Shown: one piece after another, positions 33,256-47,900 of the stretch
Layout of the letters: every line of letters starts with the position of its first letter
Position numbering within the stretch: position 1 is the stretch's first letter
Assembly: GCA_964304625.1 (NCBI GenBank)
Contig: OZ199839.1
Span: 9,593,979 to 9,657,978, forward strand
Direction of reading: 5' to 3'
Length of the DNA stretch: 64,000 nt
Source: Kudoa neothunni
Lineage: Eukaryota > Animalia > Cnidaria
Program-made: the position numbers and the translations under genes
Notes under the pieces: generated by a model
The model's database searches: none
Told to the model about the DNA's origin: nothing
The model's input: only the letters and a program-made list of their open reading frames with translations

Positions 33256-36200
33256 TTAGGAGGTATTGGCTGATTTTATTGCGGCTATTTCCCTCTCCTA
33301 AATGAAATTAAAGAATAATTGTTTACATTATCATGTAATACAGTTCCATAATGGTAATAATGAGGAGCAAGCTCAACTAACCAAAGCGGGTCAATCTAGG
33401 TTGTTACGAAAACTATAAAAATTTCAATAAATAATAAAAATACCACGGTGATATCTCGCATGTAATCTTTGTTAGAAGTGATAACTTGGTTGTAAATAAC
33501 CCTACATACAATTAATTAATATGTATACAATTGATATATTGAGTTTTATTTATTGGCAAAAAAATGTAGTACCAAGGAGGAGGTACGTCATAACAAAGTA
33601 CACTTAGCGGATGGATGTGCAAGGGGGTGTTAGAAGATAGGGTTCTATTTGAGGGTGAAAAGTGTCAAATTGATAAACAAAAATCACCTATACTCTCCAT
33701 TTGGAGTGTACTTAGCAACACATGAGAAGAATCCAGCAGTTAAACATCTTCTGACAGCAATATCATCATCTAATTAAGGCCACATTTATACGGGAGCATT
33801 TATAAAATCGTCAAACCTTCACAAGAAATAATTGGGATTTGGTACTTTTTGAGCAGTTTAACTAGACTATTTCTAATTTGATGTGCATGCAACAACGCTA
33901 CGGAAAATAGGAATTTTAAATGCAGAGTTTAGATTAGAATTCGCCCAAACCTTTATAATTGATGTAGTTTCTTTTACACCATTGTTGATCCTTGCCTTTC
34001 TATCCGACCATTTTAAAATATATAATAAAGTGTAAATATTTATACCGATATAAACGTACGATAGATATTGATGTAAGTCAAATGATCCCCTTGTTTAACA
34101 GCAAATCTCATTCTAGCTTTCTCCTAAAGTCATAAAATAGAAACATATTAGAAAAATTTTAAAGAATTGATTTTATTAATTAACAAATATTAAACAATAC
34201 AGCTTCTCTTTTTCGATTAGGAAGAATATAGTAGATATTTTCGAGTTGAAGCATCGCAGCAATGGTGACAATTTCCTCGGAACATCCAAATTCAGCAGAG
34301 GAGAATAGCATTTTGGAAATCATAGGTTCGAGAGGAAACTCAGCCACATTAACTCCAACTGTAGAAGTTAGATGGCATTTATCGTCAATGACTAAACAAA
34401 CTCATTCTAACACCATAACATAAACTATACTATTTAAAGAATAAAGAATTTGCAATCCGGACGCCATTAATTTTGCACTTGGAGCCTAACATACAGATAT
34501 AAAATGTAAACATTGGAAAAACGCACAGAAACAAAGCCAAAAGTGAGGATTTTATCGATACCAAGAGATTTCAACAGTAATATAACAGGAGCCATATCAC
34601 ATCTGTCCAATTAGATCCAATATATACTTTACATCTAAGTGAAATATACGTTAAATATTACCTTTGTATTTCTGGGATTGAACTGTTGTTGAGGCGGTTA
34701 TAATACTCCTCTGTGTATAGACGATACGCCTTGCCTGTGAGAAATTCAGTTGGCTATATTTTAGGAAAATCACAATAAACTACACACCTGGCCTAACACG
34801 ACCAGCTCTTCCACATCGTTGATCCGCTGAATCTTTTGAGATGGCAGCAGTGATAAGCATATCTAAAAACGTTGTATTAAAAATATTATATAAGGAATAG
34901 ATAATACTTATTTTTTTGTCACAATCATAAAAGGTCATTTTAGAGAGTCCGCAATCCACAACTTACAAAATTTTAAAATTCAACAGTGATAATTAAACAC
35001 TCACTGTAGACAACGTTTGGAATGGTGATTGAAGTTTCGGCAATATTTGTCGAAAAAATTATCTACAATTGCCATGTATATTAAATAATAACAAAAATAA
35101 ATCCAAATTAACAAACTTTTCGTTTTCCAACAGGAGCAGGTTGAAAAACTTTTAACTAAAAAATTTTAGTAGATTTCGCCGAGCAAGAATAGTCAGTGAC
35201 GCACCTGTTCTTGGATAGACAATGAACTATACATTGGCAGAGGTAGAATGGTTTCATTGGTAATGCTCTTAGTATCAGATTGTTCCCTAGAAACGAGAAT
35301 AAAACTATCCAGCTAATTAACAATTCAATACATCATCAAAGAAAGAGCATGTTCGATTTGATCCTGGCCGGTTAGGAAAACTAGAATGTCCCCCGATTTT
35401 TCTTGTTTATGGATTCGAAGACTAGTTTCATATGCACAGCTAACATAATCGGGAGTAGGTCTTAGAAATTGTTGTATATATGATTAAAAAAAAAACTGGA
35501 AAGTTACGATTTAAGATAGAAAACGTCAACAGGATATAGACGACCTTCAATGGACAATACATAGCTTGTCGAACTTCTTGTTGAATTACTCGTGCTATTA
35601 TAAAATTTCAATCTTAATAATTAAGAAAAAAATAGAAACTTTTTAGCACTCTTAGATAGATCGAAGAAGTCAGCAATCTTTTGAGGGTCCATGGTAGCCG
35701 AAGAAATAATAACACGAAGTTCAGGTCGTTTCATTAGAATTTTCTTCAGCAACCCCATAATAACGTCAGTATTGATGGAACGTTCGTGAACCTCATCAAG
35801 AACTATCAAACTATATTTATTAGTGATGAATTTGTTACAATAAAAACATACCTATAAGACGAGAGCAATGGATCGTACATCATTTCTCTGATAAGATGGC
35901 CATCCGTTACAAACTAGCGCAAAAAATAATAAATTATTTTTATTAATCATTTATAAATATTCTAACGAGAAATAATTAAATTATTGTTATTTCAGACAAA
36001 GTAAATAGATTTTTATTATAAAAAATGAGTAAAAATATATATAAATTTTTATAATTAAAAAGAATTAGTATAAAAAATATTTGTGATATTTAAAATATTT
36101 TTAGTGAATTGATTGTAAGCCGAGTAAATTATAAAGTTATAAAAATGCAATCAATATTATAAAACCAGATTTTATATAATCCAAATTGGTACTGTTTCTA

Positions 36201-38269
36201 TTTGTATTAAAAATTAAACTGGGAATTTAATTAATTTATTAAGAGAGAAAAAATGTTAGTTTTCTAACGACATTTGTATTCTTTCAGTAATGTTTAAGAT
36301 ATTTTCAAGAGAATTCAACGGTTTCTAATGATCATTAATAACTTTAATCACCAACTAACATTCAAAATTAACAGATATATTATCATTAATTCAGTGTATA
36401 AAGTATATATAATAAAAATTGATGAATATTTCTCTAAATTTAAAAGATTACGATAAAAATTCCTTTTAAAAATAAAAAACTAAAAATAAAATAATCACAT
36501 AGAAAGCATAAATATTTGTTAAACATCCTAATTGAAATTTTCTCAAATTCCGTAACTCTACAATAAAAAAATAATAAGTTATCATTAAATATTGGTGTAT
36601 AGTACTTGGCCAAAATTTATTATAATTTAACATTTAATCAGAATAAATATATTCAAAACAATTGAGATGAAAATTTGACGTATATAATAAATTAAAAATA
36701 ATTTTATTGTTTACTTATATTATCAAATAGTGAGCGAAAAATAGGGAAAATTTATGAAAAACATATTTAACAATATTTACTCGATAAACGTAATTAATCA
36801 TAATTTAATCTCATTGATAGACTACTTTTTATTAAAAAAAATATTTAATAGGAAAAAAGATGTTTTCAACAAATTGAATATTTTTTAAATCATAAAATAA
36901 TCAATAGAATTTTTAATTCTAACCATTTTTCTTAATATTAAAATTAACATTAATCTAATAAATAGATCTACCTTTAATTTTGATTGATTTAATTTTGATT
37001 GATTTAATTTTGATTGATTTAATTTTGATTGATTTAATTTTGATTGATTTAATTCTTGAAGGTTATTCTAATCATAATAATAATAATAATTAATAATAAT
37101 AAATTCTAAAAAAATTGATAATTGTTTTATAATTAACAATTAAATATTTTTTGGATTTATATATAAATATTCAAATAAGATCAAAGTGACCAAAAATGTA
37201 ATGTCCACTATATAATCTTCAACCTGATGCCTAAGATTTGGATGAAAACTAGCTACTGATAGACTTCGAGTCTATGCGTGCGCACAAAACAATTAGATGA
37301 TTGTGATGCTAAAAATTCAAATTTTCAAAAATTCCCATGTGTCATATATGTCATAATCAAAGAAAAAAATGATAAAAATTATTTATATTTATTTATTTTA
37401 TATGTGAGGAATTATAATAATTCAAGAAAAAATAATAAACGGAAAATTGATCGAACTTCTTTAGAAAATAATACAGATTTTGCGAAGAGACATTTCAACA
37501 ATTGAATAATGTTCGATGGAGGAATAAAAAGTAATATTTTCAACTAAAACCAAAGTTATTTTAAAACTTATGAAAATCTCTCAACAATATTATTTAGAAG
37601 AAATAGCAGAAAATTAAGCAAATAATTTGATTAGTGATATAAAATTAGTATTATAGAGTATTTAGAATGTGTGTACATTTATTCGCACGCACTTTTCTTA
37701 ATATTTGTACAGGATTTGCATAAAGCACAAAATTTACGCAGAATATTTATTCATTTAATTGAAAATTTTTATCTTTAATAGAAAATTAATAAAAAATCTT
37801 AAAATATATATATCAATAAACTATGCGCAGAATTAATGCAAATTTAAACAGAATAATATTTTAACATTTTTTAATAAAATTAATACCTACATAAAGATTT
37901 TACACAAAAATATACAATAATTATCAGAATATGAGGTTGGACGCTTCAATTTCAAAAATCCTTTGAAAAATTACTCAATATTCGCGCAAATATCGAGATT
38001 TAATATTACTTGGATTATTCAATATTTGTATGCCACAAGTTGTTTCAGTAGAAGAGATTTAATTTACGAAAAGCGTGCGCCAGTAATTTATCGTATAATT
38101 ACAAGAAAATCTCGAAATTCCAATAAAAATACTTTACATACTAACCAAAACTTTGATACAAAATTTAAAATAATAATTTCAAAAATTAAGCAAACATAAT
38201 TGAAAAATCAGTTTTATTCTCAAAAATAAATAATAAAATAATTTTATTTAAATAAGAATTGTCCTAATT

Positions 38270-38318
<49 letters not shown>

Positions 38319-39229
38319 TGAGTTAAATTAATGTGAAAGTATATTCACATATTTTCGCGCAAGCGTAATTCGTACAAATTAATCAAAAATATTAATTTTT
38401 GCAAAAAATGAACATATAAAATCAATATTAAATTCATAAATAGAGTATTTACAATATTTTTAGCTTAATACAAAATTTTACAGAAATCAAAAAAATCGAT
38501 ATTCAGATAGATATAGATAGTCAGATAATCAATAATGAGAATTTAATACTTTAATTTTAGTCTTTTCTGGCGAGAAATTTTCTTCGAATCGCATTGCATA
38601 TCCTACCACAGTCCCCAGCGCTGTATTCAACTCATCAGAAACTCTCTGCGCCACCTTAATTAAAATTAAAAATTTTCGATAAATCACGAACAAGCACTAC
38701 CGATATGGCAGCTATACGTCTGGGCTGAGTGACCCCGATCATATATCCTTTCTCTGCCCAACCCGCATGATAAAGATACTAACTTATATGATTTCAATTG
38801 AACCACTTCAAACCATTACCTGTGGTATTTGTGTGGTTTTTCCACTCCCAGTTCTCCCAACACCACCAAAGTTTGATAATGATCCAGCAAATACAACAAA
38901 CTTTCCTTGTACTAAATTATAAAAAATATATTCACTAAATTGGACTTAACTGATAATATTTCTTGTACTTTAAAAACTGGCAAACATTTCTGTTGTTTCT
39001 CTATTGGTAAGTTTATTTTGGAGTTGAAAAATATCGCCGATCCTGCTCCTTCAACTCCATCCGATTTCTCCAACCTGTATTTGGTTGAATTGGCCGAATG
39101 TTGGTGTTGACCTTTCAGCGAAATAATTCAAATTTATTATTTTAATCAACGAATTAATTAGCGTACGCACTAATGAATCATACCTGGTTTAAGAAAAACG
39201 TGTTGATTTGATTTTGAATTAGTTCCCAT
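33256..39229 (-). CDS. DHX35: DEAH-box RNA helicase DHX35 (multi-exon)
   Basis: Spliced product [42 protein letters not shown](T)[89 protein letters not shown]. The short F.KPG N-terminus and the GW motif fit DHX35. One apparent 1-nt deletion at 38852-38853; 2.6-kb intron at 35914-38549. Confidence 0.88.
36973..37054. repeat. Minisatellite (TTTAATTTTGATTGA) x ~5.5 in the DHX35 long intron
   Basis: Five perfect 15-bp units plus a partial unit, read directly from the sequence. Confidence 0.9.
38273..38312. repeat. (AT)20 microsatellite in the DHX35 long intron
   Basis: Direct read. Confidence 0.95.
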
Positions 39230-39393
39230 AACAATATGAATATGAATGTGAATGTGAATGTGAATACTAATACTAATACGAATATAAAGTGGTAAATAAT
39301 ACACCAAATATCCTTAGGGTTCGGTGAGATATTTATCTGGTTTACCTTGACACGCATGCGTGATTATAGTCATTTATTTCTGGGGTGAATTCG
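39230..39393. promoter_or_regulatory. 164-bp bidirectional promoter shared by DHX35 and PFDN1
   Basis: Divergent ATGs at 39229(-) and 39394(+). Contains the perfect palindrome CACGCATGCGTG (39351-39362) and a hexamer array AAT(A/G)NN x9 (39233-39286). Confidence 0.7.
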
Positions 39394-42300: not shown

Positions 42301-43848
42301 AACTTAATCATTATTAAATGTCTATTTTTTCTGAAATAATTGTACGTGAAATTGGTTTCTTACTATATTAATCTATTAATCGGTGGAAATTTTCTTAGTA
42401 TTTATCACATGCGCCAAAAATTCGAATTGTAACATTTATACTTCCACACATATATTTTATTTAGTTAGTTATTTTAATAATTTTCATTTCTTATATTCGT
42501 ATTATACGCTTTTTAGGATTGATTTTATTAGAATTCAATATGGGTTATTGACTAGTGAAAATTTCTAATATGTGAATTTTTATATTCTAATACATTATAA
42601 TTGTAAATATTTGTTTCAGTCAATAAAAATTCCAATTCACAACAGAAATTTGTAATGATAAATATATAGTATATTATTTGTATAACTGAAATATTGTTTA
42701 AGTTTCACTGTTTGTTAAAAAGGCACAATCAATCAAGAGAGTATGAAATTTTTAAAAGTTAGCTATTGTGAAAATATGTTTATAGTTTCATTGAAAATGA
42801 AATATACTTAATAAAAACTTTTCTGCTGATTAGCAGAATTTGTATTTTTTGTCGATTAACAACATTTGTATTAATCTATGAGCTAATGTTATCGTAAACA
42901 AGACCTCACCAGGCTATATTCCTTGCACTCTTAGGTGCAGTGCCAACTTTTTTATTAAACCTAAATAAGCTACATATATTTCTTCTTAATCTGATATATT
43001 TATCATTGTTTTTATATAATTTACCCTAATTTTTAAAATTTTTTTGATACTATACTTCTCATTTTAGACTTGTTAAATCTTGCTGTTCTCAAGTGTATAA
43101 AACCAAATTTAATATAATTTAACTGAACTTGATGCTCATTTTTGTTTTTGATACCCGCTGATTCTCAGTACTATAACTTCATTTATTAAATAATCATCCA
43201 CAATATCTCAATAAGAAGTTTTTTTTTCTTCTCGCTATAATTTTTATATTACATCGTATAATCTATTTCAGAAGAAGTAAGGTTTTTCCGAATAATTTGA
43301 TATAGAAATAATCAATACAGTTCATGTTTATAATAAAAGTATATAATAAATATTAAACTATCCTTGAAAAATTATTGGTTCAAATAAATAGATGAATATA
43401 CGTTTTAATAAAATAAATGTAATTGTTATCATAACAATAATATTAAATTTAACAAATATGATTTATTACCAATTTTGGAATTATGTTCAAGTAGCAACTA
43501 TTATAGCATGTCCTCTTGCGACAATACTCAATACTATCAATTAATATGCTTGAGTTTAAAATAAACTTTCATAATATCATTACAACACAAATGTATTTTG
43601 TTACTGATGATCCATTTAGGTACGTTCTAGAGGACCGCTCGAGCATTATTATAGCATTGGAGGCTGAGATGAAAGGATTTAATGAGGATATAGCTCGGTT
43701 AGAAGTATATTACCATCCCATGTAACATTCTCTCAGTTGATTGCTAATTAAGAGCAACAAAAAACGACTCCAACTAGAATCAGTGCAATGTGAAGAGAAA
43801 GCGCGCCAACTCATATCAAACATCAAAGTCAAAAACGTCAAATCATGA
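39394..43848 (+). CDS. PFDN1: Prefoldin subunit 1 (exons 39394-39423, 39469-39634, 43620-43704, 43753-43848); largely missed by the ORF track
   Basis: Spliced product MTSYNEQLKD-AIADLQLKK(I)TNRQ..EKINLLPGETRTYQTVGNM-YVLEDRSSIIIALEAEMKGFNEDIARLE-SNKKRLQLESVQCEEKARQLI..* aligns with PFDN1 (ELKKAFTELQ..ETNMYEGVGRMFIL..). It needs one extra base in the A6 run at 39490-39495. Confidence 0.8.
40420..41350 (-). mobile_element. Decayed hAT-family transposase inside PFDN1 intron 2
   Basis: Minus-strand IPLSSTAVQRSFSKFKYFLEDNKANL (~40425-40503) matches the hAT dimerisation motif P.SS..VERSFS. WISID..VDRNGKY near 41300-41335 resembles the first catalytic-Asp region. Multiple stops and frameshifts. Confidence 0.55.
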
Positions 43849-43948
43849 TAAATAAAACAAATAATAGTTAGAATGCTATAGTTACTAATTTCTTTCAATT
43901 TTACTAATCAATTGTAACCTCCATTTCTCATTTCTGAGTCGTTGCGGA

Positions 43949-44953
43949 TTAAGCCAAAGCGAGTTTTTTCTCCTCAAGCAATTCCTCGGCTGAAGCCATC
44001 ATGGCGGCTTTGGTCTCTTCGGAGATAGCCAAATCTTTGACAATAGTGTATTTACCATCCTTGATAGTCACAGGGAAAGAGAAGAAAATTCCTGCGGGAA
44101 TTCCATAAGCGCTACCATCGGAGTAGACTCCCATGGATACCCAGTCACCTTCAGCAGTACCGTTGAACCAATCGTACATGTGATTGGCGGCAGCGTAGGC
44201 AGCAGAAAGCGCACTTGATCTCTTTCTGAGAGCAATCACAGCAGCGGCTCTTTCTTTCACTTCTGGTACGTACACTTCTTTCAACCACTTGGAGTCGTTG
44301 ATAGCTTCAAGGGCATTAACTTTTCCTTTACCTTCCAATTCGGCCATGGCAAACGAAGCGTCAGGAACCATGGAAGATGAGTGGTTACCCCACACCAAAG
44401 CTCTAGTCACCTGTCTGGGGTTGATGTTCAATTTCTCGGCGATAAACGATTTCGCCCTATTGTGGTCCAATCTGGTGAGACAGGAGAAGTTTTCTTTGGG
44501 GATTGTTTTGCTCATTTCAGCAAGTATAGCACAATTTGTATTGGCTGGGTTGGCAATAACAACAACTTTGCAGTTCTTGTTGGCATGCATATCCAAGTAC
44601 TCAGCCTGTTTTTGATAGATCTCACGGTTGGCTTGGAGAAGATCAGATCTTTTCATACCTTCCTTGAGGTTCAATGCACCAGCAACAAGCACAGCGGCAT
44701 CAATTCCTTCGAAAGCTTTCTCTTGATCCACAACAACATCTATCTGTCTCAGCAGAGGGAAAGCGCAATCCAACAGTTCCATTCTAACACCCTTGAGCAC
44801 ATCCTCACAAACTTTAAGATCGCACATGACCAAATGAACTGGCTGGTTGGGACCGAAATAACATCCAGATCCAATCATAAAAACTAAACTGTAACCAATT
44901 TGGCCAGCAGCTCCGGTAAGAAGCACTTTCAATGTCTTTTTCTCTTCAACCAT
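43949..44953 (-). CDS. Cytosolic malate dehydrogenase (MDH1)-family 2-hydroxyacid dehydrogenase with altered specificity residues (candidate LDH); intronless, 334 aa
   Basis: VLLTGAAGQIGYSL Rossmann motif, GVRMELLDCAFPLL, NPANTN, CLTRLDHNR (D163/R166), WGNHSS (H191), WVSMGVYSDG..YGIP..FSFPV. Family assignment is unambiguous, but the specificity Arg is replaced by Leu96, so the MDH1 symbol is withheld. Confidence 0.95.
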   Translation of the reverse strand: MVEEKKTLKVLLTGAAGQIGYSLVFMIGSGCYFGPNQPVHLVMCDLKVCEDVLKGVRMELLDCAFPLLRQIDVVVDQEKAFEGIDAAVLVAGALNLKEGMKRSDLLQANREIYQKQAEYLDMHANKNCKVVVIANPANTNCAILAEMSKTIPKENFSCLTRLDHNRAKSFIAEKLNINPRQVTRALVWGNHSSSMVPDASFAMAELEGKGKVNALEAINDSKWLKEVYVPEVKERAAAVIALRKRSSALSAAYAAANHMYDWFNGTAEGDWVSMGVYSDGSAYGIPAGIFFSFPVTIKDGKYTIVKDLAISEETKAAMMASAEELLEEKKLALA

Positions 44954-47900
44954 AACACCCGAATCAGCCAGTTAATTTACAGGACGTGTGAGGTTACCGA
45001 ACAGACAACTCGGAATATCCCTTAACACTCAATATGAGTTGGATTACAGTTGGTTCAATTAAATCCGAGTTGTAATCCATAAGAAGTATTGTACACGAGT
45101 TTATTCACAAATAAACTCTATCCTATATTGATACATATCGTCTGATTGGACTCCTGTAGACTCATTGATAACTGTTTTTGATAATGTTAGCAAAATATTT
45201 CCATTATGTTGTTTTCCACCCTAATTATCTGTTATCCAAATCAAACATCCTCTATTTTGATTTAATAATAGCACTATCTTATTGTTTATCGAAGATAACT
45301 GATTTTATTAAGCAGATGAGATTTTAATGCTAATTCATTCTAGAATATTCTGGTTTGACTTAATTTTAGCAAGTATCAACTGTACGCCCCCTTTGAATCA
45401 AGATTTAAAAATCTTTGAGTAATAGATTTCGCTAATATTTCAAATTATAAATATTCATTCCTTTATCTGTCCCAGTGTTATCCTATCCCTTGTGGAATAC
45501 ATAAAAAGAGGGTGTTAAAATAGTTCTCACGATACAGCTTAATCCTTGTTATACTCCTTCTCGCAAAACACGCTAGGGTTGTTTACATGAAAGCGGATCA
45601 TTCGTTATCCTTCCGTTGTTTCTTTTTATTTATTTGTTTTATACAACTACGGTGGGTAACTAATAATACACAATCTCATTAATATGGTGTATCCTAGTTT
45701 ATGTTAAGTGATACGTTTATAACATGGTAATGTTTATAAGAGGCTAATTGTCGTTAAAATCTTCTTGAATTAAACTAGGAAATTACCATTTCATTGTGCC
45801 ACGTGATTACCCAAATAGATTTTATTTTTCCGATTAAGTCACGTATATTTGATTTTTATTTATTTACAAATGTGAAACAATTAAATTCGTACGACTTGGT
45901 TTTTGAATAAATGTTAAAAATAACGGATAATTAATCCAGTCTACATCTGGAAACGTAATAATAATCATTAATAAACAGTTTATAATATACGGATGCGTCA
46001 AAGTTTACTCAAATGGTAGATTATATAAAATTTTGACACATTTCGTGAACGAATTCATGAGAACTCTGGATAAGATAATAATTTATCACTTGATCAATGC
46101 TTATGTCTGGATGGTTTGATGAAGTAAAAAAATTTAAGTTAATTTCAGTGGATAAAATAATTAAACTAAAAAATTAGTTATAAAAATAAGCAATGACTCA
46201 AATAATATCTAGGGTGATTTAGGGATACTAAACATTAGTGGGATATGGAGAGATTATGTTTTATATTTATATTATGCCCACATTATACCAATACAGATAG
46301 AAGGAGTTCTTCACACAAGTTGTAACATTTTTGAATGTTTCTCATAAGATTTTATATTTAATTAAATCAAGTTCATCTAATTTTATTGAAAATATGAATA
46401 ATTCTAATCCCCAAATAAGTCATTTTGTGGGTAGGAATTTGTTTTATGTTAACTTAAATCAAACGGGAAAAATTAAAAAATGCTATTAAGATATAACTAG
46501 GTATTTATTAAGCGAACAAAATTTTGAGCTTATGATTAATGTCCAATATAAAAATCAGTCCTAATATAAGATATTGGCATTCACCCATGTTCATCAGAAT
46601 GATTTAAGAATTTTTCGATGACAAGAGAATGCCTTTGGACATATCTAGCAAATATAATATATTCAATGTATATTAAAATGGAATAAATTAGATTTCTATA
46701 GATTGTTAATTTCCAGTTATTAAATAATGTAATACATGCAAAATATAAAATATTTAGATACGAATTATAAGAAATTTAGTTAAATGAGGCGCTAGAAAAT
46801 AAATAAGAAAAAAATTATTGTTATCATTACCCAAAAATGAACATTTTCTAAATATTATCTTAATGTAAATGACAACATTTTTTTTAAATAAAAATTTAAC
46901 AACCATTCTATTACCCATTCTGAATGTTAACGAAAATACAAAGACAAAATAATGCATCATTAAGTGAATTACGTATTATCGATTACATACTGTATACTCT
47001 TTTTAGCATTCAATTAATAATGCTGGATATATTATTTCTAAATCAGGTAACAACTTTAATACGTTATACATAGATAAAATTGATAGCTTTGATGTGTTTT
47101 TAAATTTCCAATTTATATAATATTTTATTAATTATGAAAAATATATGAATATGTTATATTCACTATAAATAATGCGTTATTTTATATCAACTTAACTTTT
47201 TTAAATTTAAAAATATTTACAATAGGTATTATTAATGAAAAGTGTGTAACGGAACAATTTATTTGTTTATTTATTCACATATATCCATCTATATTAGCTA
47301 AGACATTAATTATATTATCGATAAAAAGTATATCCCAACGTAGAAATAATTTGGTTGAAATAACACCTCGTTATAGTTAACATATCGTATTCCAATAAAC
47401 ATTTATTAAAATATTTATTTTCTAATTATTAAGCTCATAATAAAAAATTATATAAAGTTTAGAGTTTCCCAATAATTAATATAGTATTTTATAAACTTTT
47501 ATATTGGATATAACATTGGAAAAATTAAATAATTGTTTGCAATGATTTGTGTTAAATTTTTTATTTTAATTAGTCAATTATACGCTTTCATATTTTTAGT
47601 TTATTAACTGAAAATTATACTATTTCAAGAGTAATAAATTAGTTTTTATTTCAACGTTAGTATAATGAAAGCTTTTGCATTTATTATATATTTTTGTCTT
47701 AATACATTTTACTATTATAATAATAAAAAATATAATATTCATAAGATAATAATTTTAATAAATTGGATTATTTTCCATTAATACATTTAATTGTTTTTTT
47801 CTATTAAACTCAGAATCTTTTCAAAGAAAATTATGAAACTATGAATTTTGCAATTCTCTATATCACTTTAAATCTAATAAATTATCAGAAAGTATTATAT

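What the first reader, a model, noticed from the sequence alone, without database searches (positions are those of the whole stretch)
43949..44953. Cytosolic MDH with the Trichomonas-type Arg-to-Leu and Gly-to-Ala switch: candidate convergently evolved lactate/2-hydroxyacid dehydrogenase
Seen in sequence: the mobile loop reads LVAGALNLKEGMKRSDLL where cMDH has LVG(S/A)MPR(R/K)EGMER.DLL. Anchoring on EGM, Leu96 (CTC codon, 44666-44668) occupies the site of the Arg that binds the second carboxylate of malate/oxaloacetate (Arg102 in LDH numbering), and the loop has one extra residue. The substrate-pocket motif QRGAAVI reads ERAAAVI (Ala236, 44246-44248), VGNP reads IANP and HSSTQYPD reads HSSSMVPD. 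The catalytic His191/Asp163/Arg166 and the loop Arg102 are intact. Established knowledge, recalled rather than searched: Trichomonas vaginalis LDH arose from cytosolic MDH with Leu at this Arg position, and Leu-to-Arg restores MDH activity. Trypanosoma cruzi aromatic hydroxyacid dehydrogenase also lost this Arg and altered the Gly position. Inference: this holozoan has independently recruited an MDH1 copy as an LDH or broader 2-ketoacid reductase, for example for fermentative NAD+ regeneration. It could easily be mis-annotated as MDH1.
Basis: partly seen in the sequence, partly recalled or inferred. Interest (0 to 1): 0.92.

Follow-up and report, generated by a model that had tools for sequence, protein, structure and literature searches.

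The report
Myxozoan MDH-derived candidate lactate dehydrogenase
A fish-muscle parasite (a myxozoan, probably Kudoa) carries an expressed, strongly conserved copy of cytosolic malate dehydrogenase with the same three active-site changes that turned malate dehydrogenase into lactate dehydrogenase in Trichomonas, so it is probably this animal group's missing lactate dehydrogenase, though no enzyme assay exists yet.

Summary
Window 43949-44953 (minus strand) is an intact, intronless 334-aa gene of the cytosolic MDH type. It has Leu96 at the MDH specificity Arg (LDH numbering 102), a one-residue loop insertion (Ala91), Ala236 in place of Gly236, and Met195 in place of Gln199. All catalytic and NAD-binding residues are intact.

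It is not an assembly error. An independent run carries the same codons, with 12 synonymous and 1 non-synonymous difference. A syntenic orthologue at 74% identity (synonymous sites saturated, dN 0.22) keeps every feature.

Relatives with the same signature occur in Henneguya salminicola (NCBI "hypothetical protein") and in other samples. A second, intron-bearing paralogue lies on another contig of this genome. Together they form a supported clade, separate from the trichomonad LDHs.

Solved-structure sequences show that Trichomonas LDH differs from Trichomonas MDH at the same three first-shell sites (R102L, Q199M, G236A). This is a triple parallelism.

The genome keeps an Arg-bearing MDH1 and an MDH2. 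No canonical L-LDH and no D-2-hydroxyacid dehydrogenase was detected.

The most likely function is pyruvate-to-lactate reduction for NAD+ regeneration. This is inferred, not shown. The tree does not resolve whether the gene arose from animal MDH1.

The scan had noted this stretch before (s1-699028, s1-699218). It had also noted an Arg-to-Leu MDH1-type gene on another piece of this genome (s1-692985), probably that paralogue.

The parts
43949..44953 (-). Intronless CDS (334 aa plus stop) of the Leu-type cMDH-family dehydrogenase
   Evidence: ORF. Pfam Ldh_1_N plus Ldh_1_C. TIGR01759 scores 423 bits, over its cut-off; TIGR01758 scores 420, under its cut-off of 470. AF2 pLDDT 96.3 and TM 0.95 to MDH1.
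43888..44977 (-). Extent of the transcript-like contig in independent run X5 (about 24 nt 5' UTR and about 61 nt 3' UTR)
   Evidence: a 1090-nt contig at depth 23.9 with 16 differences and no coverage of the flanking AT-rich DNA. The same run has a neighbouring contig lacking a 48-nt GT..AG segment, so it behaves as RNA.
44666..44668 (-). Leu96 codon (CTC) at the MDH specificity position (cMDH Arg91 / LDH 102)
   Evidence: Unchanged in X5. Leu in P0001, P0121, P0122, P0123, P0354 and the C3 paralogue.
44681..44683 (-). Ala91 codon, the one-residue insertion at the start of the mobile loop
   Evidence: An inserted Ala at this column was found only in WIN, P0001, P0121 and P0122 among 271 sequences, and also in P0354.
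44369..44371 (-). Met195 codon (LDH 199, a first-shell residue; Gln in MDH1 and TvMDH, Met in TvLDH)
   Evidence: The first-shell residue list is from PMC4109310.
44246..44248 (-). Ala236 codon (LDH 236, a first-shell residue; Gly in MDHs, Ala in TvLDH and Plasmodium LDH)
44648..44653 (-). Lys101-Arg102: the retained loop Arg (LDH 109), preceded by Lys where MDHs have Glu (LDH 108)
   Evidence: Arg is invariant. Position 108 is Glu in 200 of 240 Arg-bearing sequences but K/K/T/S/P in the Leu-type clade and I/I/V in the TvLDH-like sequences.
44381..44383 (-). Catalytic His191 (LDH 195). Asp163 is at 44465-44467 and Arg166 at 44456-44458, both also intact.
44894..44917 (-). NAD-binding motif TGAAGQIG (Asp45 at 44819-44821 specifies NAD)

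Best explanation
The gene encodes an active, cytosolic, NAD-dependent L-2-hydroxyacid dehydrogenase of the dimeric cMDH fold. It has given up oxaloacetate and most likely reduces pyruvate to L-lactate. It would serve as the lactate dehydrogenase of myxozoan parasites, regenerating NAD+ for glycolysis.

Proposed mechanism (inferred). Catalysis uses the unchanged His191/Asp163 pair, and Arg166 binds the C1 carboxylate. Loop closure brings Arg102 (LDH 109) onto the 2-oxo group. The residue that in MDH salt-bridges the C4 carboxylate (Arg at LDH 102) is now Leu96. Gln199 to Met and Gly236 to Ala fill and make hydrophobic the space that the -CH2-COO- arm occupied, which fits a methyl group.

The same three first-shell substitutions separate Trichomonas LDH from Trichomonas MDH. 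The clade is old: it occurs in Kudoa and in Henneguya, and it has two paralogues. It exists beside ordinary MDH1 and MDH2.
For: Shown:
- The ORF, domains and catalytic residues are intact.
- The model has pLDDT 96.3 and TM 0.95 to MDH1.
- Leu102, Met199, Ala236 and the insertion are conserved in a syntenic orthologue (dN 0.22, pS 0.82, saturated), in H. salminicola HZS_7644 and in P0121/P0122.
- There are 12 synonymous and 1 non-synonymous differences to an independent run, which also indicates expression.
- TvLDH (ASMPLKPGQVR, HGESMVAD, HRAWDI) differs from TvMDH (GSFPRKDGMDR, HSNTQVPD, TRGGAVI) at the same sites.
- PDB 4uul is the TvLDH L91R mutant.
- Literature: all known MDHs have Arg102 and trichomonad LDH has Leu. 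Residues 102, 199 and 236 are first-shell, and Plasmodium LDH has Ala236 (PMC4109310).
- The own genome has four LDH/MDH loci only: this gene, a canonical MDH1 with GAAPRKAGMDR, a second Leu-type paralogue, and an MDH2.
- No PF02826 hit, while PK and PDH E1 are found as positive controls.
- The gene scores below the MDH_euk_cyt equivalog cut-off.
Against: - No kinetic data exist for any member of the clade.
- In other backgrounds a single R102 substitution gave poor LDHs (PMC4109310), so sequence alone cannot fix the substrate.
- Lys101 (LDH 108) and Arg245 add positive charge near the pocket in the Kudoa proteins and could bind a second carboxylate.
- The second paralogue and P0123 have Val236 and Asn or Trp at 237, which suggests substrates may differ within the clade.
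- Absence of other LDHs rests on six-frame, exon-by-exon searches of a 40-Mb assembly. The opine dehydrogenase search had no working control.
- The RNA nature of run X5 is inferred. Its record is guessed to be DNA.
Confidence: 0.62

Rival explanations
1. It is a 2-oxoacid reductase with another or a broader substrate range (2-oxobutyrate, glyoxylate, or branched-chain or aromatic 2-oxoacids from amino-acid catabolism). It would work like T. cruzi AHADH, which is a cMDH-family enzyme without MDH activity.
For: Loss of Arg102 removes dicarboxylate selection but does not by itself specify pyruvate. AHADH shows that cMDH-type enzymes can take aromatic substrates. Two diverged paralogues with different residues at 236/237 (A-A against V-N or V-W) suggest sub-specialisation.
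Against: Gly236 to Ala and Gln199 to Met shrink the side-chain pocket rather than enlarge it. The triplet is the one seen in a characterised LDH. No other pyruvate reductase was detected in the genome.
Confidence: 0.22
2. It is still a malate dehydrogenase. Another basic residue (Lys97, Lys101 or Arg245), repositioned by the loop insertion, takes over binding of the C4 carboxylate.
For: It passes the NCBIfam MDH models TIGR01759 and NF003916. Specificity residues can move, as with Trp107f in apicomplexan LDH. Lys101 and Arg245 are conserved between the two Kudoa orthologues.
Against: Lys97 corresponds to a Lys or Arg that ordinary MDH1 already has. Position 108 is T, S or P in the other clade members, so no compensating residue is conserved. 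Arg102 is invariant in all known MDHs. The genome already has canonical MDH1 and MDH2. Gly236, kept in 236 of 240 Arg-bearing relatives, is also lost.
Confidence: 0.1
3. It is a non-catalytic or decaying copy (a pseudoenzyme or retro-pseudogene), or an assembly or contamination artefact.
For: It is intronless and richer in GC (45%) than its 20-30% GC surroundings (note s1-699218).
Against: Every catalytic and cofactor residue is intact. Purifying selection is strong. It is syntenic in a relative and intronless there and in L023 too. An independent run carries it at high depth. The pyruvate kinase gene of this genome is also an uninterrupted ORF. The flanks are typical of the host genome.
Confidence: 0.03

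Closest known systems
Trichomonas vaginalis L-lactate dehydrogenase (PDB 4uum/4uun/5a1t; NCBIfam TIGR01756 LDH_protist)
   Same: A cMDH-fold enzyme derived from a cytosolic-type MDH. It has Leu at 102, Met at 199 and Ala at 236, and has lost Glu108, relative to its MDH counterpart. Its host lacks a canonical LDH.
   Different: It is not the same family. The window protein scores 241 bits on TIGR01756 against a cut-off of 486. It is less similar to TvLDH (212 bits) than to TvMDH (233) or mammalian MDH1 (333). It lies in a separate clade. It has a one-residue loop insertion that TvLDH lacks. The host is an animal.
Animal and plant cytosolic malate dehydrogenase MDH1 (PDB 5mdh, 7rm9, 5nue; TIGR01758)
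   Same: About 50% identity and the same fold (TM 0.95). The catalytic His/Asp/Arg and the NAD motif are identical, and there is no targeting peptide.
   Different: Arg102 is Leu, Gln199 is Met, Gly236 is Ala and Glu108 is Lys, with a loop insertion. It scores below the equivalog cut-off. The true MDH1 of this genome lies elsewhere (C1:14781700-14782836).
Apicomplexan LDHs (Plasmodium, Toxoplasma, Cryptosporidium)
   Same: Independent recruitment of an MDH as an LDH in a parasite that lacks the canonical LDH. A loop insertion is involved, and Plasmodium has Ala236.
   Different: Those enzymes derive from tetrameric LDH-like bacterial MDHs. They have a 5-6-residue insertion and a relocated Trp specificity residue. 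Here there is a one-residue insertion and a direct Arg-to-Leu replacement in the dimeric cMDH lineage.
Trypanosoma cruzi aromatic L-2-hydroxyacid dehydrogenase (AHADH)
   Same: A member of the cytosolic MDH group without MDH activity.
   Different: It acts on aromatic 2-oxoacids.

Membership tests
Cytosolic-type (dimeric) MDH superfamily, NCBIfam TIGR01759 MalateDH-SF1 / Pfam Ldh_1_N + Ldh_1_C | Both Pfam domains present and a whole-protein score over the subfamily cut-off (345.65 bits) | tested here: met
   PF00056 scores 99 bits and PF02866 145 bits. TIGR01759 scores 423.4 bits. The fold has TM 0.95 to MDH1.
Bona fide eukaryotic cytosolic malate dehydrogenase (TIGR01758 equivalog, EC 1.1.1.37) | Score over the equivalog cut-off (470.4 bits) | tested here: not met
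   420.2 bits. The orthologue P0001 scores 412, P0121 364, P0122 366 and P0123 346.
Bona fide eukaryotic cytosolic malate dehydrogenase (TIGR01758 equivalog, EC 1.1.1.37) | Arg at the specificity position (LDH 102 / cMDH 91), stated to be present in all known MDHs | tested here: not met
   Leu96. The literature statement is in PMC4109310.
Bona fide eukaryotic cytosolic malate dehydrogenase (TIGR01758 equivalog, EC 1.1.1.37) | Gly236 in the RGAAVI helix (first shell) | tested here: not met
   Ala236. Gly is present in 236 of 240 Arg-bearing relatives.
Trichomonad LDH (TIGR01756 LDH_protist) | Score over the equivalog cut-off (486.25 bits) and shared ancestry with trichomonad MDH | tested here: not met
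   240.6 bits. A starred branch (96/97) separates the Leu-type rows from the TvLDH-like rows. However, an AU test on the larger tree does not reject joining them (p = 0.41).
Trichomonad LDH (TIGR01756 LDH_protist) | Active-site signature Leu102, Met199, Ala236 | tested here: met
   Window L96, M195, A236 against the TvLDH motifs PLKPGQVR, ESMVAD and RAW.
Canonical L-lactate dehydrogenase (TIGR01771) | Score over the cut-off (303.55 bits) and Gln102 | tested here: not met
   75 bits. Leu, not Gln, at 102.
Functional class: NAD-dependent pyruvate reductase (L-LDH activity) | kcat/Km for pyruvate much greater than for oxaloacetate | not testable with these tools
   Requires enzymology. Only sequence parallels with TvLDH are available.
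T. cruzi aromatic 2-hydroxyacid dehydrogenase (AHADH) | Its specific pocket residues and its activity on aromatic 2-oxoacids | not tested
Only review statements were seen.

The most novel reading that the evidence does not exclude
Myxozoa, a whole group of parasitic animals, replaced the canonical LDH with an MDH-derived LDH. It evolved independently of Trichomonas through the same three first-shell substitutions (R102L, Q199M, G236A) plus a loop insertion. This would be a further independent origin of LDH from MDH and, as far as the papers read here list, the first in animals. The enzyme would be the fermentative NAD+ regenerator of these parasites, including Henneguya salminicola, the animal reported to have lost its mitochondrial genome. 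It would also overturn the published inference that myxozoans cannot make lactate.
Probability: 0.5. Interest if true: 0.85.

Novelty: new variant of a known kind. Interest (0 to 1): 0.78.

Why it matters
MDH-to-LDH switching is a textbook model of enzyme neofunctionalisation. The papers read here list origins in canonical LDHs, Plasmodium, Cryptosporidium, Trichomonas and Selenomonas (PMC10583557), none of them inside animals.

A myxozoan clade that repeats the trichomonad triplet at positions 102, 199 and 236 would be a natural replicate. It would allow a test of how repeatable that evolutionary path is, and of what a one-residue loop insertion adds.

It also bears on parasite physiology. 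The Thelohanellus genome paper concluded that myxozoans lack LDH and cannot make lactate (PMC4986447). Henneguya salminicola is reported to have lost its mitochondrial genome, so it needs a cytosolic NAD+ sink. The orthologue in that species is annotated only as "hypothetical protein".

Automatic pipelines would name these genes malate dehydrogenase, which would hide the pathway. An enzyme this unlike the fish host's own LDH could be of interest as a selective target against Kudoa in aquaculture. That last point is speculative.

Tried and rejected
- Assembly error: rejected. An independent run carries identical Leu, Ala and insertion codons, and orthologues keep them.
- Pseudogene or retro-pseudogene: rejected. 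The synonymous to non-synonymous ratio is 12:1, dN is 0.22 with saturated dS, and all catalytic residues are intact.
- Recent horizontal transfer suggested by GC content and lack of introns: not supported. The CDS is 45% GC against about 25% in the flanks. The same holds for the intronless relative L023, and this genome's pyruvate kinase is also an uninterrupted ORF. The gene is syntenic in a relative.
- Descent from trichomonad LDH: rejected on scores and on the 30-row tree.
- IANP as a diagnostic motif: rejected, because Ala is common in ordinary MDHs.
- Lys97 as a substitute for the Arg: rejected, because that position is already basic in MDH1.
- Phylogenetic origin: attempted but left open. 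AU tests reject neither "Leu-type plus animal MDH1 plus own MDH1" (p = 0.13) nor "Leu-type plus TvLDH-like" (p = 0.41). Monophyly of the Leu-type rows is compatible with the data (p = 0.43).
- Profile search with the Leu-type alignment: swamped by ordinary MDH1s because of the candidate cap and found no new members. A single-sequence search with P0121 found the Henneguya protein.
- RNA runs X11 and X12: nothing laid on the stretch, so they are no test.
- Paper searches for the SRA accessions: nothing found.
- Steindel et al. 2016 (PMC4918429): not held.
- Opine dehydrogenase search: had no working control.
- The intron-bearing paralogues on C1 and C3 were analysed exon by exon, as separate rows and by reference.

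Full report
**1. What is in the sequence**

Window 43949-44953 on the minus strand is a single uninterrupted ORF of 334 codons. It carries both LDH/MDH Pfam domains. It scores 423 bits on the cytosolic-type MDH subfamily model TIGR01759, over that cut-off. It scores 420 bits on the eukaryotic cytosolic MDH equivalog TIGR01758, whose cut-off is 470. It scores only 241 bits on the protist LDH model (cut-off 486) and 75 bits on the canonical L-LDH model.

The best solved relatives are mammalian MDH1 (about 1e-98). HMMER aligns the mobile loop as LVAGALNLKEGMKR against LV-GSMPRR(D/E)GMER. Anchored on the invariant G-M-x-R, Leu96 falls on cMDH Arg91, which is position 102 in LDH numbering. Ala91 is an extra residue.

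Arg102 (LDH 109), Asn135, Asp163, Arg166, His191, the GAAGQIG motif and Asp45 are intact. An AlphaFold model built on a 50-sequence alignment has mean pLDDT 96.3. Only the mobile loop is lower, at about 74. The model superposes on MDH1 structures at TM 0.95.

**2. It is real, expressed and under selection**

Contigs of the probable source sample (X1) are identical to the window. A run from another study and another organism label (X5) has a 1090-nt contig covering only 43888-44977, at depth 23.9 and with 16 differences.

Within the CDS, 12 of the 13 differences are synonymous. The one exception is E3A. The Leu96, Ala91, Met195 and Ala236 codons are unchanged.

X5 totals only about 25 million letters. 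It does not cover the AT-rich flanks. It also holds a neighbouring contig that lacks a 48-nt GT..AG segment (43705-43752). It therefore behaves as RNA, although its record is guessed to be DNA. I take this as inferred evidence of expression.

The closest database protein, P0001 (74% identity, Logan only), sits on a 4.6-kb contig. There it is also intronless, and it is followed by the same multi-exon downstream gene as in the window (window 34756-39232). It is therefore a syntenic orthologue. dN is 0.22 and synonymous sites are saturated (pS 0.82). It keeps LVAGAMALKEGMKR, ERAAAVI and HSSSMVPD.

**3. The rest of the family in this genome**

Six-frame searches of the 40.3-Mb assembly, with the protein and with both Pfam models, find four loci:

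- the window gene;
- C1:14781700-14782836, an intron-bearing canonical MDH1 with GAAPRKAGMDR, VGNPANTN, HSGTQYPD and KRGEAII;
- C3:9315666-9317202, an intron-bearing divergent paralogue that also has the insertion and the Leu (LLANKMVLTDDIKR), with HSNSMHPD and DRVNAII;
- C3:822251-823430, which matches mitochondrial MDH2.

No canonical L-LDH was detected. No member of the D-2-hydroxyacid dehydrogenase family was detected. Pyruvate kinase and PDH E1 are readily found by the same method. The opine dehydrogenase search is uninformative because its control was empty.

The two intron-bearing paralogues were handled exon by exon, by reference and as separate rows.

**4. Which organism, and how wide the clade is**

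Earlier notes of this scan call the genome a myxozoan, probably Kudoa neothunni. A preprint mentions a chromosome-scale K. neothunni assembly obtained as a by-product of host sequencing. I did not verify the species.

An exhaustive representative search put three unnamed Logan proteins at the top: P0121, P0122 and P0123, at 47-48% identity. All three have Leu102, Met199 and a non-Gly residue at 236. P0121 and P0122 also have the inserted Ala.

A search with P0121 then found NCBI "hypothetical protein HZS_7644 [Henneguya salminicola]" at 71% identity, with CLAGALALGEGMTR, HASSMVPD and ERAMLVV. That independently ties the clade to Myxozoa. It also shows that the clade spans the Kudoa and myxobolid lineages.

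P0121 and P0123 come from one sample. This mirrors the two paralogues in this genome. P0121's genomic contig is again an intronless 45%-GC CDS in 25%-GC flanks.

In a 30-row maximum-likelihood tree, the nine Leu-type rows are split from all other rows by a branch with 96/97 support. The other rows include this genome's own MDH1 exons, animal, plant and protist cMDHs, bacterial relatives and the TvLDH-like sequences.

On the 56-row tree the backbone is weak. AU tests do not reject:

- Leu-type monophyly (p = 0.43);
- union with the TvLDH-like clade (p = 0.41);
- union with animal MDH1 plus the own MDH1 (p = 0.13).

Whether the clade arose by duplication of the cnidarian MDH1 therefore remains open.

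**5. Why LDH is the best reading**

The eLife study of apicomplexan LDHs states that all known MDHs have Arg102 and that trichomonad LDHs have Leu there. It lists residues 102, 109, 140, 168, 171, 195, 199, 236 and 237 among the first-shell residues. It notes Ala236 in the strictly specific Plasmodium LDHs.

Using a parabasalid-type relative (P0152) as query, the PDB sequences could be read directly:

| Enzyme (PDB) | Loop | 195-200 region | 235-240 region |
|---|---|---|---|
| TvLDH (4uum) | ASMPLKPGQVR | HGESMVAD | HRAWDI |
| TvMDH (4uuo) | GSFPRKDGMDR | HSNTQVPD | TRGGAVI |
| Reconstructed ancestral trichomonad MDH (4uup) | GSFPRKPGMER | HSNTQVPD | QRGGAVI |

The characterised MDH-to-LDH switch in Trichomonas therefore involves R102L, Q199M and G236A, and loss of Glu108. 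The window protein shows L96, M195, A236 and K101 at exactly these positions.

The window protein is less similar to TvLDH (212 bits) than to TvMDH (233), the ancestral trichomonad MDH (267) or mammalian MDH1 (333). The shared states are therefore parallel, not inherited.

Across 270 family sequences, loss of Arg102 is associated with loss of Gly236: 14 of 30 against 4 of 240, Fisher p = 4e-12. This test is not corrected for phylogeny.

Together with the retained MDH1 and MDH2 and the missing canonical LDH, this makes pyruvate reduction for cytosolic NAD+ regeneration the most economical function. It remains an inference.

**6. Caveats and rivals**

- Single substitutions at 102 gave poor LDHs in other backgrounds.
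- Lys101 and Arg245 add charge near the pocket in the Kudoa proteins, although these residues are not conserved across the clade.
- The second paralogue and P0123 carry Val236 and a different residue at 237, so substrates may differ within the family.
- A broader 2-oxoacid reductase, AHADH-like in principle, is the main rival.
- Retained MDH activity is unlikely, and a dead copy or an artefact is essentially excluded.

**7. Novelty**

Full-text searches found no paper describing an MDH-derived LDH in Myxozoa. The Thelohanellus genome paper explicitly infers that myxozoans lack LDH and cannot produce lactate. A recent review of LDH origins lists canonical, Plasmodium, Cryptosporidium, Trichomonas and Selenomonas events only.

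This would therefore be a new, independent instance of a known kind of enzyme switch, in an animal lineage. It is flagged by a three-site parallelism with Trichomonas and by its own one-residue loop insertion.

The scan had already noted this stretch (s1-699028, s1-699218). It had also noted an Arg-to-Leu MDH1-type gene on another piece of the genome (s1-692985), probably the C3 paralogue.

Noticed in passing
G000:C3:9315666-9317202 (loci L004-L006, L008): The second Leu-type paralogue looks mosaic. Its last exon is 69% identical to the window gene but 44-46% to other clade members. Its first large exon groups with P0123 (99/92 support) and is only 33% identical to the window gene. This could be gene conversion between the two paralogues or very uneven rates.
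   Followed up: partly
G000:C2:4405137-4406117: The pyruvate kinase gene is an uninterrupted 540-codon open frame (441 bits on PF00224) in this otherwise intron-dense genome. Intronless, relatively GC-rich glycolytic genes may be a class here (highly expressed genes that lost their introns?).
   Followed up: no
window 43620-43845 (+), intron 43705-43752: A short gene on the plus strand converges on the 3' end of the dehydrogenase gene. A 48-nt GT..AG intron in it is removed in a contig of run X5.
   Followed up: partly
window 34756-39232 (-) and L009:2838-4593: A many-exon gene downstream of the dehydrogenase is conserved exon by exon (52-95% identity) and in the same order and orientation in the 74%-identity relative. 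That relative's genome is even more AT-rich (22% GC overall, CDS GC3 12%).
   Followed up: partly
proteins P0121-P0270: About 30 of 270 cMDH-type sequences lack Arg102. They include a ciliate (Pseudomicrothorax dubius), a tick protein (Dermacentor silvarum KAH7941443.1), Tara Oceans sequences and several unnamed clades. Uncharacterised non-MDH members of this subfamily may be more common than the statement 'all MDHs have Arg102' suggests.
   Followed up: partly
whole assembly G000: There is no hit at all to the D-isomer 2-hydroxyacid dehydrogenase family PF02826. That family would also include PHGDH and GRHPR, and its control genomes all gave hits. This could be gene loss in the parasite or a detection failure on short exons.
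   Followed up: no
window 43198 / 45617: One contig of run X1 joins 43198 to 45617, skipping 2418 bases that include the whole gene. Only 24 letters lie on the shorter side and there are many short loose ends near 45750-45790. It looks like a dispersed short repeat rather than a deletion allele.
   Followed up: no
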